Below, piece after piece: positions 1,558-43,801 of a stretch of DNA of 64,000 nucleotides; the stretch's first letter is position 1; every line of letters begins with the position of its first letter. The stretch covers positions 124,001-188,000 of IMG/VR virus record IMGVR_UViG_3300030085_002431. One strand, 5' to 3'. A program made the position numbers and the translations under genes. Under the pieces are notes generated by a model. It ran no database searches, was not told the DNA's origin, and worked only from the letters and a program-made list of their open reading frames with translations.

Positions 1558-1628
1558 GCGAGTGTGGTGTAGCGGTAACATGCGAGCCTTCCAAGCTCTT
1601 GTCACGGGTTCGATCCCCGTCACTCGCT
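1558..1628 (+). tRNA. tRNA-Gly (TCC)
   Basis: GCGAGTG/CACTCGC acceptor stem, CT-TCC-AA anticodon loop, ACGGG-TTCGATC-CCCGT T arm; no encoded CCA. Confidence 0.95.
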
Positions 1629-5716: not shown

Positions 5717-5751
5717 TTTGCCTAAGGAGAGTTCGATCCTCTCATCGAGCA
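5679..5751 (+). tRNA. tRNA-CAT (elongator Met or Ile2)
   Basis: GCTCGAT/ATCGAGC acceptor, GCAAA-CTCATAA-TTTGC, GAGAG-TTCGATC-CTCTC; lacks initiator GGG/CCC stem. Confidence 0.92.
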
Positions 5752-5955
5752 TAGTCTTGGGATGACTTAAAAAGCACCCTGGTCGGGATGGGTTCTTACG
5801 ACCCCTCGGGTTTCTTGCTTTTCCATAAGAGCAAGTGGTGGAGCTAAGTGCTATCGAATATACCCCGCAGGATAAGGGTTAAGCCTGCTGGTGCGGACAT
5901 CTGCAAAGGTTTCTTGTTTTTCCTTACGTCTAAAAAAACAAGTGGCGAGCCTGCA
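5752..5955 (+). ncRNA. Structured cyanophage RNA, manA-like (manA/wcaG group)
   Basis: ~200 nt right after a tRNA and before a sugar epimerase; two GGTTTCTTG...CAAGTGGYG hairpin units, CTGGTCGGG/CTGGTGCGG motifs. Confidence 0.7.
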
Positions 5956-5963
5956 TACTAACG

Positions 5964-34158: not shown

Positions 34159-34200
34159 AATCAACGACGAAGAAGTTTACATTTCTTAATCCGTTGGACC

Positions 34201-34290
34201 ACACCCCTTAAACCGAGACCTCTAGGGTGTCAAAATTACGTCTCTCATACCAACCCTGGAGGGTAGGGTTGGAATATTATATTCAGTGTT
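34201..34290 (+). ncRNA. PhotoRC-II-like psbA leader RNA
   Basis: GAGAC/GTCTC stem, CCCT/AGGG pseudoknot potential, CCAACCCT/AGGGTTGG hairpin, upstream of psbA. Confidence 0.75.
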
Positions 34291-42869: not shown

Positions 42870-42898
42870 TTGACTATATAAAAGACAGGGACTATAAT
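42870..42898 (+). promoter_or_regulatory. sigma70 promoter
   Basis: TTGACT-17-TATAAT. Confidence 0.85.
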
Positions 42899-42907
42899 GT
42901 CCTCATA

Positions 42908-43141
42908 CGTTCATCCTAATGCTCAGTCTAATACTGGCATTGACCTTAGCCCATCATGATGATGCTAATCCATATGGTTGGCATATGAGTTGTGAAAGGT
43001 TTTTAGAGAAACGAGTTGAAATCCTTATGGACGACAACTTGGACCGACGTGCAAAGTATAACCTTATAGGTTATTTTAAATCGAAGGTTCCAGGTGAATG
43101 CAATAGTATACTGACTTAGGACGCAAGTAAGTCGCGGAACG
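42908..43141 (+). ncRNA. Glutamine-riboswitch-like unit 1, ORF in P2 loop
   Basis: P1 CGTTC/GAACG; P2 TCCTAA/TTAGGA; CGCAAGTA junction. Confidence 0.7.
42919..43119 (+). CDS. 66-aa protein nested in riboswitch unit 1
   Basis: Hydrophobic N-terminus, Cys25/Cys61. Confidence 0.7.
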   Translation: MLSLILALTLAHHDDANPYGWHMSCERFLEKRVEILMDDNLDRRAKYNLIGYFKSKVPGECNSILT

Positions 43142-43144
43142 GAG

Positions 43145-43323
43145 CGTTCATCCCATGTTAGAATTACTACTCTACAGTAATATTCACTGCATTGATGCTG
43201 TTGAAATGATTCAACGCATTGAAGCAAATAAAAATGTGGATAAAGTTATTCGCACTGAGGTGATTGAGACCTTAAAGGAAGCAACACCTGAGTGTAATTG
43301 GGACGCAAACGACTGAAGGAACG
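43145..43323 (+). ncRNA. Glutamine-riboswitch-like unit 2, ORF in P2 loop
   Basis: P1 CGTTC/GAACG; P2 TCCCA/TGGGA; CGCAAA-CGACT-GAAG. Confidence 0.7.
43155..43316 (+). CDS. 53-aa protein nested in riboswitch unit 2
   Basis: MLELLLYSNIHC...TPECNWDAND; GGAG SD at 43141-43144. Confidence 0.7.
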   Translation: MLELLLYSNIHCIDAVEMIQRIEANKNVDKVIRTEVIETLKEATPECNWDAND

Positions 43324-43356
43324 GGGCTACAATCCCATTCTTTTAGGAGACCTACA

Positions 43357-43524
43357 ATGAACACCCTCAATCTCATTCGCAAGCAAATCGAAAAGCAGGC
43401 AGCACTGCATGACGCACAAATCTCTCATACCGCATATCGTGGTGTTGAGTATGACCAACGTTGTGTAGAGTCCAAAGAGACTCATGGAACTTTCTGCTAT
43501 CGTGGCAAAACTTACACCAAGTAA
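43357..43524 (+). CDS. DUF4278-like YRG peptide (55 aa)
   Basis: AGGAGA SD; AYRGVEY and CYRGKTY. Confidence 0.85.
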   Translation: MNTLNLIRKQIEKQAALHDAQISHTAYRGVEYDQRCVESKETHGTFCYRGKTYTK

Positions 43525-43528
43525 ACCC

Positions 43529-43624
43529 ATGCAACAATTAACAGTCGTTGGATTAATTTCCTTAGGTTGTATTGCATTTATCGGAATGATGTATGGTGAG
43601 ATTCTCCTCCTGAATAGGAGGTAG
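43529..43624 (+). CDS. 31-aa membrane peptide
   Basis: MQQLTVVGLISLGCIAFIGMMYGEILLLNRR. Confidence 0.55.
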   Translation: MQQLTVVGLISLGCIAFIGMMYGEILLLNRR

Positions 43625-43801
43625 ATGGAACACTACACTTATCATCATGATGATAAGGACAAAGATAGTAGACCACCAGCATGTTATCAACTCACATATA
43701 GAGGTGTTAACTACTGGTCCTGTTATCAAATCCACTTGGATGAATGGTTTGAAAAATTATATACAACTTCAGCATTTTCTGAAGATTTAAAGGGGAGGTA
43801 A
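43625..43801 (+). CDS. Second YRG-motif peptide (58 aa)
   Basis: AGGAGG SD; LTYRGVNY. Confidence 0.7.
   Translation: MEHYTYHHDDKDKDSRPPACYQLTYRGVNYWSCYQIHLDEWFEKLYTTSAFSEDLKGR

What the first reader, a model, noticed from the sequence alone, without database searches (positions are those of the whole stretch)
42919..43316. The two nested proteins look like divergent paralogs
Both have a hydrophobic ML.L.L start, a Cys pair 35-36 residues apart (C25/C61; C12/C47), a central DDNLD / NKNVD turn and end ...PGEC / ...PEC. This suggests duplication of an [aptamer-half + ORF + aptamer-half] cassette encoding a disulfide-clamped helical hairpin of unknown function.
Basis: partly seen in the sequence, partly recalled or inferred. 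Interest (0 to 1): 0.6.

Follow-up and report, generated by a model that had tools for sequence, protein, structure and literature searches.

The report
Paralogous small proteins nested inside glutamine riboswitch
Two tiny cyanophage genes that sit inside the hairpin loops of a glutamine-sensing RNA are real genes and probably distant copies of one two-cysteine helical-hairpin protein, so one RNA may both sense glutamine and encode proteins it controls.

Summary
ORF1 (42919-43119, 66 aa) and ORF2 (43155-43316, 53 aa) have the stated Cys pairs, central turn and P(G)EC motif.

Both are real genes in T4-like cyanophages (syn9 gp196 and gp197; PHROGs 6471 and 504). Median dN/dS is 0.13 and 0.27-0.29.

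Direct BLASTP and narrow profiles show no similarity. Deep, diverse profiles align the two Cys-to-Cys: hhalign probability 82-85%, P about 1e-5, above every permutation control.

AlphaFold helix and turn boundaries coincide at an offset of 13 residues. All 239 distinct loop-nested ORFs found (four families) have exactly two Cys, 35-38 apart. I rate paralogy at about 0.8.

Both ORFs lie in the apical loops of the first hairpins of two adjacent glutamine-aptamer units, behind a sigma-70-like promoter and ahead of a DUF4278 (IF17-like) gene. The enclosing stems covary. ORF-less twins of the same leader exist, as do free-standing homologues.

"Duplication of a cassette" is therefore only one possible route, and the disulfide is untested.

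Inferred mechanism: aptamer folding and translation of the nested ORFs exclude each other, so glutamine would toggle between the nested proteins and the IF17-like protein. What the proteins do remains unknown.

The parts
42870..42898 (+). Sigma-70-type promoter, TTGACT-17 nt-TATAAT. The predicted transcript start lies a few bases before the first CGUUC.
   Evidence: scores it 11 of 12. The same arrangement is conserved in relatives and in the ORF-less twin L095. The start site itself is inferred, not mapped.
42908..42921 (+). 5' half of aptamer unit A: CGUUCA, then the 5' strand of the hairpin (UCCUAA). This strand overlaps the ORF1 start codon at 42919-42921.
   Evidence: It matches Rfam Glutamine-II positions 1-15 as a 3'-truncated hit of 10.5 bits, weak because it is short. 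The stem covaries with 43116-43121.
42919..43119 (+). ORF1, 66 aa. It is a two-Cys small protein of PHROG 6471 and the counterpart of syn9 gp196.
   Evidence: Median dN/dS is 0.126 and variability by codon position is 3>1>2. AlphaFold2 gives pLDDT 79.5 with helices 2-13, 25-37 and 43-54.
43116..43142 (+). 3' half of unit A: the 3' strand of the hairpin (UUAGGA, which holds the ORF1 stop codon TAG), then CGCAAGUAAGUCGCGGAACGG.
   Evidence: The stop codon covaries with the 5' strand: TAG with UCC, TAA with UCUUA, TGA with UCUCA.
43141..43144 (+). GGAG, a likely Shine-Dalgarno site for ORF2, 10 nt before its AUG. It is made of the last G of GAACG, the following G and the AG of the linker.
   Evidence: The linker is GAG in 68 of 75 units that carry an ORF in loop B, against 3 of 124 units with a short loop B. 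Its function is inferred.
43145..43157 (+). 5' half of unit B: CGUUCA, then UCCCA. The A of the ORF2 AUG (43155) is the last base of the stem.
   Evidence: All five pairs of the stem are kept in 46 of 46 distinct stems.
43155..43316 (+). ORF2, 53 aa. It is a two-Cys small protein of PHROG 504 and the counterpart of syn9 gp197. Its last five codons (WDAND) and its stop codon are the aptamer core UGGGACGCAAACGACUGA.
   Evidence: Median dN/dS is 0.27-0.29, and third-position entropy is zero in the last five codons. AlphaFold2 gives pLDDT 77.4 with helices 2-24 and 30-43.
43299..43324 (+). 3' half of unit B: UGGGA, then CGCAAACGACUGAAGGAACGG, the Glutamine-II type core.
   Evidence: In five loci U-A becomes C-G (CACCCCA with UGGGGC), which changes the protein from WDAND to WGAND. 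The same core with a 4-nt loop occurs in L095, L103, L154 and L170.
43323..43349 (+). Small hairpin GGGG-CUACAAU-CCC, followed by the ORF3 Shine-Dalgarno site GGAG at 43346-43349. This is the likely expression platform.
   Evidence: Read from the sequence and conserved in relatives. Its role is inferred from the Glutamine-II literature (PMC6698751, PMC6212724).
43357..43524 (+). ORF3, 55 aa. It is the DUF4278 / IF17-like 'downstream peptide' that glutamine riboswitches normally control. It belongs to PHROG 545 and is the counterpart of syn9 gp198.
   Evidence: PF14105 at E 1.6e-4 and 22.4 bits, below the cut-off of 25.3; phrog_545 at E 2.3e-35. PMC6212724 links these aptamers to DUF4278 genes.

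Best explanation
ORF1 and ORF2 are real, translated small-protein genes of a T4-like cyanophage. They are most likely distant paralogues within one phage superfamily of 50-75 aa proteins. Members share a hydrophobic N-terminus, a Cys at the start of helix 1, a short acidic turn, helix 2, and a second Cys 35-38 residues after the first, so the two Cys lie at the open end of a helical hairpin. In this phage each gene occupies the apical loop of the first hairpin of one of two adjacent glutamine-aptamer units. These units form the leader of a DUF4278 (IF17-like) gene and are transcribed from a sigma-70-like promoter. Each start codon lies in the 5' strand of the enclosing stem. The ORF1 stop codon lies in the 3' strand of its stem. 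ORF2 runs on through the conserved core of unit B. ORF2's likely Shine-Dalgarno GGAG is built from the two G's that close unit A in the ligand-bound fold. The following steps are inferred, not shown. When glutamine is high the aptamers fold, burying both start codons and the ORF2 Shine-Dalgarno site, and the downstream IF17-like gene is translated. When glutamine is low, ribosomes translate the nested ORFs and thereby keep the aptamers open. The nested proteins would then be low-nitrogen products that act on host nitrogen or redox physiology through a Cys-clamped or Cys-sensing hairpin. Their target is unknown.
For: The genes are real. 420 phage records hold the region, and syn9 and Sf-CH1b annotate both ORFs. 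Median dN/dS is 0.126 for ORF1 and 0.27-0.29 for ORF2. PHROG matches have E 3.5e-35 and 7.6e-23. Marine metatranscriptome contigs hold the exact sequence.

Paralogy. hhalign of A6 against A7 gives 81.8%, E 1.1e-5, over 40 columns from Cys to Cys. In-box runs give 83.8%. A profile built from 36 representatives returned by the big search gives 85.1%. Permutation z-scores are 5-10, also with the Cys columns fixed, and reversed profiles score lower. The best cross-family BLASTP hit is 8.6e-6 and collinear. Every one of 239 distinct nested ORFs has exactly two Cys, 35-38 apart. The predicted turn is 38-42 in ORF1 and 25-29 in ORF2, the same offset of 13 as in the alignment.

Nesting. The stems covary: C-G 36 against U-A 19 at pair 3 of stem A, and 5 of 5 pairs are kept in 46 of 46 B stems. 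Contiguous aptamers with identical cores but 4-23 nt loops occur in relatives, and loops are either 7-23 nt or about 150-220 nt. The ORF-less twin L095 scores 43.6 bits on Rfam Glutamine.

Shine-Dalgarno link. The linker is GAG in 68 of 75 units with an ORF in loop B, against 3 of 124 without.

The RNA is strongly structured: -140.3 kcal/mol against -105.6 +/- 5.6 for shuffles, z = -6.2.
Against: The profile probability stays below 95%. The two window proteins alone show no detectable similarity, and HMMER profiles of one family do not find the other in the phage's own genome at E<=1. PHROGs, which clusters by remote homology, keeps them apart. A helical hairpin is a very common fold, and Foldseek finds nothing specific. 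I could not superpose the two models or measure the Cys-Cys distance. There is no experimental evidence here for translation, for glutamine binding by the split aptamers, or for reciprocal control. The read data are contigs only and do not show a transcript start. The cyanobacterial cytoplasm is reducing, and the N-termini lack the positive charges of a typical export signal, so a structural disulfide is doubtful.
Confidence: 0.6

Rival explanations
1. The two proteins are unrelated. They look alike because both are short helical hairpins selected under the same constraints: they must fit inside an RNA hairpin loop, start in its 5' strand and end near its 3' strand.
For: There is no pairwise or narrow-profile similarity. 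PHROGs keeps the families separate. The ORF1 coding sequence is itself shaped by RNA pairing: the codons for Ala-Leu-Thr at 42937-42945 pair with those for Gly-Glu-Cys at 43093-43101, and a Val/Ile codon change is coupled to a synonymous Asn codon change. Permutation controls destroy helical periodicity and so flatter any two amphipathic hairpins.
Against: Free-standing members of the ORF1 superfamily, with no aptamer around them, keep the same Cys pair, spacing and N-terminus (P0180 in L363). These features are therefore protein-level, not RNA-driven. The interior of ORF2 shows no conserved RNA helix. Reversed profiles, which keep periodicity, score 11-18 against 23-30 for the real ones. Four families link to each other with the same Cys-to-Cys register.
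Confidence: 0.18
2. The proteins are paralogues, but the nesting has no regulatory meaning. The apical loops are simply permissive sites where phage recombination dropped small genes. Those genes are then expressed constitutively from the early promoter, and the riboswitch works only on untranslated copies.
For: Loop length in this hairpin is free, from 4 to about 220 nt, and all four combinations of loops with and without an ORF occur. Free-standing homologues show that the protein does not need the aptamer.
Against: The start codons always sit in the stem (A of AUG paired in 54 of 59 A stems and 46 of 46 B stems). The stop codon of ORF1 covaries as part of the stem. The ORF2 Shine-Dalgarno site appears only when an ORF is present and is made from the closing G's of unit A. 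An aptamer interrupted by an actively translated 150-200 nt insert could hardly keep such perfect conservation unless the two processes were coordinated.
Confidence: 0.3
3. The open frames are not protein-coding. They are structured RNA spacers of the riboswitch that happen to be open.
For: The 456-nt leader is far more structured than shuffles, z = -6.2. ORF1 contains covarying helices.
Against: dN/dS is 0.13-0.29 and variability by codon position is 3>1>2. Length changes come in whole codons. W, C, D and K columns are invariant across 30-60% identity. The 1.84-billion-protein library holds 86 protein clusters of the ORF1 type.
Confidence: 0.02

Closest known systems
Glutamine-II riboswitch (Downstream-peptide motif, Rfam RF01704) controlling DUF4278 / IF17-like genes in marine picocyanobacteria (PMC2864571, PMC6212724, PMC6698751)
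   Same: It has the same core sequences (CGUUCA, hairpin, GACGCAA, GAAGGAACG), the same kind of downstream gene (a DUF4278 small protein with YRG motifs) and the same ecological group. Relatives with short loops score 27-32 bits on RF01704.
   Different: Here the hairpin loop holds a whole protein-coding gene of 150-200 nt, so Rfam finds no contiguous match in the genome. Two units stand 3 nt apart, and the nested ORF2 is translated through the conserved core.
Glutamine riboswitch type I (glnA RNA, RF01739), including tandem arrangements noted by Weinberg et al. 2010 (PMC2864571)
   Same: The ORF-less twin of this leader (L095) passes the RF01739 gathering score, 43.6 against 35 bits. Unit A carries the AAGUA element typical of type I.
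   Different: Rfam reads that twin as one aptamer spanning both units, with unit B inside its third stem. It is unresolved whether the RNA is a simple tandem or an interleaved pair. No ORF-bearing loop has been described for this class in the papers I could search.
syn9 gp196 and gp197; PHROGs phrog_6471 and phrog_504 (function unknown)
   Same: They are direct family members, at the same positions between the promoter and gp198, the DUF4278 gene.
   Different: They are annotated only as hypothetical proteins in separate families. Neither their mutual relationship nor their position inside aptamer hairpins is annotated.
Small regulators of cyanobacterial nitrogen or carbon status: IF7/IF17 (GS-inactivating factors), NblA (about 60 aa helical hairpin induced by N starvation), CP12 (phage-encoded small Cys-pair regulator)
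   Same: They are of similar size. NblA is a helix-turn-helix hairpin, CP12 uses Cys pairs as a redox switch, and all are tied to N or C status, as this locus is through its glutamine sensor.
   Different: There is no Pfam match to NblA or CP12 at E<=1, and neither appears among the structure matches listed. The resemblance is a lead from memory, not a result.

Membership tests
PHROG phrog_6471 (ORF1) and phrog_504 (ORF2) | Full-length match to the family HMM | tested here: met
   ORF1 matches at E 3.5e-35 over profile positions 1-65 of 66; ORF2 matches at E 7.6e-23 over 1-53 of 53.
One superfamily joining ORF1 and ORF2 (two-Cys helical-hairpin phage proteins) | Significant profile-profile similarity | tested here: inconclusive
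   hhalign gives 81.8-85.5% probability with P about 1e-5, and the real score exceeds all permutation and reversed controls. This is still below the customary 95%, and narrow profiles give 0.2%.
One superfamily joining ORF1 and ORF2 | Exactly two Cys at a fixed spacing, at the start of helix 1 and just after helix 2 | tested here: met
   All 239 distinct nested ORFs have two Cys 35-38 apart. Of 36 representatives taken from the big search, 33 have a single Cys pair 36-39 apart.
One superfamily joining ORF1 and ORF2 | Same predicted secondary structure in the alignment register | tested here: met
   ORF1 has helix 25-37, turn 38-42 and helix 43-54. ORF2 has a helix ending at 24, turn 25-29 and helix 30-43. 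The offset is 13, as in the hhalign alignment.
One superfamily joining ORF1 and ORF2 | Superposable three-dimensional structures with adjacent Cys | not testable with these tools
Glutamine-II riboswitch (RF01704) | Pseudoknot strands CGUUC and GAACG, the GACGCAA strand, and a covarying first hairpin | tested here: met
   The sequences are present in both units. The long-range hairpins covary, and RNAalifold recovers stem B with U-A in 28 sequences and C-G in 2.
Glutamine-II riboswitch (RF01704) | Score at or above Rfam's gathering threshold (33 bits) | tested here: not met
   There is no contiguous match in the window or genome. The 5' half alone scores 10.5 bits as a truncated hit. Short-loop relatives score 27.2 and 32.1 bits. 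The 150-200 nt inserts are beyond what the model allows.
Glutamine riboswitch type I (RF01739) | Score at or above Rfam's gathering threshold (35 bits) | tested here: inconclusive
   The window itself gives no match. Its ORF-less twin L095 scores 43.6 bits and L133 scores 35.6 bits, both as a single aptamer spanning both units.
Glutamine riboswitches (both classes) | Selective binding of L-glutamine with a structural change | not testable with these tools
   This needs in-line probing, ITC or SHAPE on the RNA.
DUF4278 / IF17-like (ORF3, the gene downstream) | Pfam PF14105 at or above its gathering score (25.3 bits) | tested here: not met
   One search gives 22.4 bits, E 1.6e-4, covering only part of the profile. 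ORF3 does match phrog_545 at E 2.3e-35 and carries the YRG motifs.
NblA (PF04485) and CP12 (PF02672) | Pfam match or structural match | tested here: not met
   Neither ORF has any Pfam family at E<=1. Neither NblA nor CP12 is among the Foldseek PDB matches listed.

The most novel reading that the evidence does not exclude
A riboswitch that encodes proteins inside its own ligand-binding domain. The glutamine aptamers of this cyanophage leader would act as an OFF switch for the genes nested in their hairpin loops and, at the same time, as an ON switch for the IF17-like gene behind them. That would give a one-transcript toggle between low-glutamine and high-glutamine proteins. The two units may also be interleaved, sharing a helix, rather than simply tandem, which would couple their folding.
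Probability: 0.35. Interest if true: 0.85.

Novelty: new variant of a known kind. Interest (0 to 1): 0.65.

Why it matters
Glutamine riboswitches are the known RNA sensors of nitrogen status in marine picocyanobacteria and their phages. Nothing is known about how phages use them. I found no description, in the papers held here, of a protein gene placed inside an aptamer hairpin.

If the nested genes and the downstream IF17-like gene respond in opposite directions to glutamine, this would be a new regulatory logic, in which translation and ligand sensing compete on the same RNA. It would also give a direct handle on how abundant ocean viruses read and reprogram the nitrogen state of their hosts.

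Joining four orphan families (about 86 clusters at 50% identity for the ORF1 type alone) into one two-Cys hairpin superfamily turns hundreds of hypothetical proteins into one testable object. The work also shows that covariance-model scans miss riboswitches whose loops carry large inserts.

Tried and rejected
**No similarity at first pass**
- BLASTP of the two window proteins found no alignment at E<=100.
- Narrow family profiles A1 against A2 gave hhalign probability 0.2%. This was superseded by the diverse profiles.

**Family libraries**
- Pfam, NCBIfam and PADLOC gave no usable family for ORF1 or ORF2.
- The only rows were a far sub-threshold SPIN peroxidase-inhibitor match (14.8 bits against a cut-off of 45) and matching weak PDB sequence hits (E 0.26-0.7). 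I treat these as noise.

**Structure searches**
- Foldseek against the PDB gave nothing better than E 2.3.
- BFVD returned the protein's own family and other small cyanophage proteins, with E above 0.01.
- The ESM Atlas returned only viral hypothetical clusters.
- The NblA-like and CP12-like ideas found no support.

**RNA searches**
- Rfam found no contiguous glutamine aptamer in the window, in the genome or in 12 related loci.
- The 3' halves gave no truncated hits.

**Other sources**
- The genome-contig scan with ORF3 returned only two phage-like contigs binned in MAGs, so host counterparts were not examined.
- The read data are Logan contigs only. They show that the sequence is present in RNA libraries but give no transcript ends or expression levels.
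- The Syn9 transcriptome paper was not found, and Ames & Breaker 2011 is not held.
- No complex prediction was run, because I make no binding claim.

Full report
**What is at the coordinates.** The window belongs to a 250.6 kb T4-like cyanophage record. Rfam finds PhotoRC-II and wcaG RNAs in it, and the region matches 420 Synechococcus and Prochlorococcus phage records. ORF1 lies at 42919-43119 (66 aa) and ORF2 at 43155-43316 (53 aa), both on the + strand. The only correction is that five and six residues follow the last Cys.

**Both are real genes.** The same two ORFs are annotated in syn9 (gp196, gp197) and Sf-CH1b. Word searches found 78 and 50 clusters at 90% identity. The ORFs match PHROGs 6471 and 504 over their full length. 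Across unique coding sequences, variability by codon position is 3>1>2. Median dN/dS is 0.126 for ORF1 and 0.27-0.29 for ORF2. Marine metatranscriptome contigs from at least two studies hold the exact sequence. These are contigs, so they do not prove transcription or give transcript ends.

**Where they sit.** A strong sigma-70-type promoter (42870-42898, 11 of 12) is followed directly by this series:
- CGUUCA and a stem 5' strand ending in the ORF1 AUG.
- ORF1, whose stop codon TAG lies in the stem 3' strand.
- CGCAAGUAAGUCGCGGAACGG, then the linker AG.
- CGUUCA-UCCCA, whose last A begins the ORF2 AUG.
- ORF2, whose last five codons and stop codon are UGGGACGCAAACGACUGA.
- AGGAACGG, a small hairpin and a Shine-Dalgarno site.
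- ORF3 (43357-43524), a DUF4278 / IF17-like protein.

These are the conserved strands of glutamine aptamers. The 5' half matches Rfam Glutamine-II positions 1-15. The 3' motif occurs only at these two places in the genome, and never in the reversed-pattern control. Rfam finds no contiguous aptamer because each first hairpin carries a 150-200 nt insert.

**The enclosing stems are real.** I parsed about 200 distinct units from IMG/VR loci. Stem A shows C-G (36) against U-A (19) at its third pair, and U-A, C-G and A-U at its fourth. The ORF1 stop codon takes part: TAG goes with UCC, TAA with UCUUA, TGA with UCUCA. Stem B keeps all five pairs in 46 of 46 distinct stems. One of its changes, U-A to C-G, turns the protein tail WDAND into WGAND.

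Relatives carry the identical cores with 4-23 nt loops. Loop lengths fall into two classes, 7-23 nt and about 150-220 nt, and all four combinations occur. L095 is an ORF-less twin of the whole leader, with the same promoter and the same downstream gene. It passes the Rfam Glutamine gathering score, 43.6 against 35 bits. In the metatranscriptomes, contigs that skip ORF2 and carry UUCG or similar short loops lie on the same flanks.

**Are the two proteins related?** The first tests said no:
- BLASTP found nothing.
- Narrow profiles gave hhalign probability 0.2%.
- PHROGs keeps the families apart.

Collecting every ORF nested between a 5' half and a 3' half changed the picture. 239 distinct proteins fall into four families:
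- F0: the ORF1 type with two further subfamilies; 133 proteins, in position A.
- F1: the ORF2 type; 64 proteins, in position B.
- F2: 37 proteins, in position A.
- F3: 5 proteins, in position B.

Every one has exactly two Cys, 35-38 apart. Cross-family BLASTP reaches 8.6e-6 with collinear Cys-to-Cys alignments.

Profile comparisons gave these results:

| Comparison | hhalign probability | P or E |
|---|---|---|
| F0 vs F1 | 83.8% | 7.9e-6 |
| A6 vs A7 (tool alignments) | 81.8% | 1.1e-5 |
| 36 big-search representatives vs F1 | 85.1% | 6.2e-6 |
| 36 big-search representatives vs F2 | 75.7% | 2.4e-5 |
| 36 big-search representatives vs F3 | 59.7% | 8.8e-5 |

The A6/A7 alignment pairs ORF1 22-62 with ORF2 9-48.

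The controls support this. No column permutation reached the real score in any test (0 of 100 to 150; z 5.6-8.1). The same held with the Cys columns fixed (z 5.0-10.1). Reversed profiles scored 7-18 against 22-30 for the real ones. Independently, AlphaFold2 places the turn at 38-42 in ORF1 and at 25-29 in ORF2, the same offset of 13.

I put common ancestry at about 0.8. It remains short of proof, because the probability is below 95% and the models could not be superposed.

**RNA-driven convergence is unlikely.** The ORF1 coding sequence is itself constrained by RNA pairing, which could mimic protein similarity. But the exhaustive profile search found 86 clusters of the ORF1 type, all small proteins apart from one 240-aa repeat protein with a weak match. 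Some members are free-standing. P0180 lies between the portal and Mu-F genes of a GC 51% phage, with no aptamer halves nearby. P0156 lies 200 nt upstream of a contiguous aptamer. Both keep the hydrophobic N-terminus and the Cys pair. The interior of ORF2 shows no conserved RNA helix.

**How the arrangement arose.** Nothing shows that a whole cassette was duplicated. The two 3' halves differ. ORF-less and half-occupied leaders are common. The stems flanking both loops share about 9-10 identical bases on each side, so an ORF-bearing loop could move between units by recombination. Either route gives paralogues.

**Likely mechanism (inferred).**
- In stem A, the A of the AUG is paired in 54 of 59 distinct stems, the U in 35 and the G in 40.
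- In stem B, the A is paired in 46 of 46.
- ORF1 has no Shine-Dalgarno site and begins about 14 nt from the predicted 5' end.
- ORF2 has GGAG 10 nt upstream, formed by the G that ends GAACG, the next G and the linker AG.
- That linker is GAG in 68 of 75 units with an ORF in loop B, against 3 of 124 without. The two groups are phylogenetically clustered, so this is suggestive only.

In the solved Glutamine-II structure, those two G's form the last pseudoknot pair and the ligand-dependent long-range pair (PMC6698751). Glutamine binding is reported to switch the downstream DUF4278 gene on (PMC6212724). I therefore propose that high glutamine folds the aptamers and hides both AUGs and the ORF2 Shine-Dalgarno site, while ORF3 is translated. 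Low glutamine would let ribosomes translate ORF1 and ORF2 and keep the aptamers open. What the proteins then do is unknown. No family, structure or feature search gave a lead.

**Unresolved: tandem or interleaved.** Rfam reads the ORF-less twin as one type-I aptamer running from the first CGUUC to the last GAACG, with unit B inside its third stem. In the window, AGUCG (43130-43134) is complementary to CGACU (43310-43314). The only natural double variant among 194 distinct units changes GAACG of unit A and CGUUC of unit B so that they still pair with each other. In a simple tandem, that change would cost one pair in each unit (L022, L027, L352). Against this, phages with a mini hairpin (CCG/CGG) in unit A fit a tandem better.

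**Novelty.** Full-text searches on glutamine riboswitches with cyanophage, tandem, Downstream-peptide, Glutamine-II and nested ORF found no description of genes inside the aptamer hairpins, or of a link between these protein families. Ames & Breaker 2011 is not held, so this absence is provisional.

Noticed in passing
L095:8336-8422; window 43130-43134 with 43310-43314: Rfam's type-I Glutamine model reads the ORF-less twin as a single aptamer spanning both units, with unit B as a 38-nt insert in its third stem (43.6 bits). In the window, AGUCG and CGACU could form that shared stem, so the two units may be interleaved rather than tandem.
   Followed up: partly
L022, L027 and L352 (junction between the unit A 3' half and the unit B 5' half): This is the only double variant among 194 distinct units: GAACG becomes CAACG in unit A together with CGUUC becoming CGUUG in unit B. 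The change keeps a local hairpin between the two units but costs one pair in each unit of a simple tandem.
   Followed up: partly
L002:1957-2000 (syn9) and many other relatives; absent from the window: An extra conserved element follows unit B in many phages: AACGGAUCC, a short GNRA-type hairpin, then GAGAAGGUUAA. A second variant ends in UAAAGGAG. It has no Rfam match at E<=0.1.
   Followed up: partly
window 42937-42945 with 43093-43101; columns 114:137 of alignment A10: The ORF1 coding sequence doubles as a long irregular hairpin. The Ala-Leu-Thr codons pair with the Gly-(Gln/Glu)-Cys codons. A Val/Ile codon change covaries with a synonymous Asn codon change (G-C 18, A-U 13).
   Followed up: partly
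window 43299-43316; relatives such as L174, L148 and L279: The protein tails are dictated by the aptamer core. ORF2 always ends in W(D/G)AND, encoded by UGGGACGCAAACGACUGA. Many ORF1-type relatives end in GRK, encoded by GGACGCAAGUAA.
   Followed up: yes
L363:1501-1725; L366:1186-1389: Free-standing homologues of the ORF1 superfamily exist. One lies between the portal and Mu-F genes of a GC 51% phage, with no aptamer halves nearby. Another lies 200 nt upstream of a contiguous glutamine aptamer, near a weak NblA-like gene.
   Followed up: partly
window 43484-43624 and 43625-43801: Behind ORF3 lie a 46-aa hydrophobic ORF and a 58-aa ORF with a weak second DUF4278 match (E 0.019; it contains YRGVNY). 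The locus may therefore hold two IF17-like genes.
   Followed up: no
window 1558-1628, 5751-5956 and 34189-34285: The window also holds a tRNA, two adjacent wcaG RNAs and a PhotoRC-II RNA, all above Rfam gathering scores.
   Followed up: no
L091:2256-2381 and other loci with a short loop in unit B: In phages where only unit A carries an ORF, the downstream gene is a different, shorter DUF4278-like peptide (MAQVTYRG... with a poly-Gln stretch) rather than the MNTL... type found in the window.
   Followed up: no
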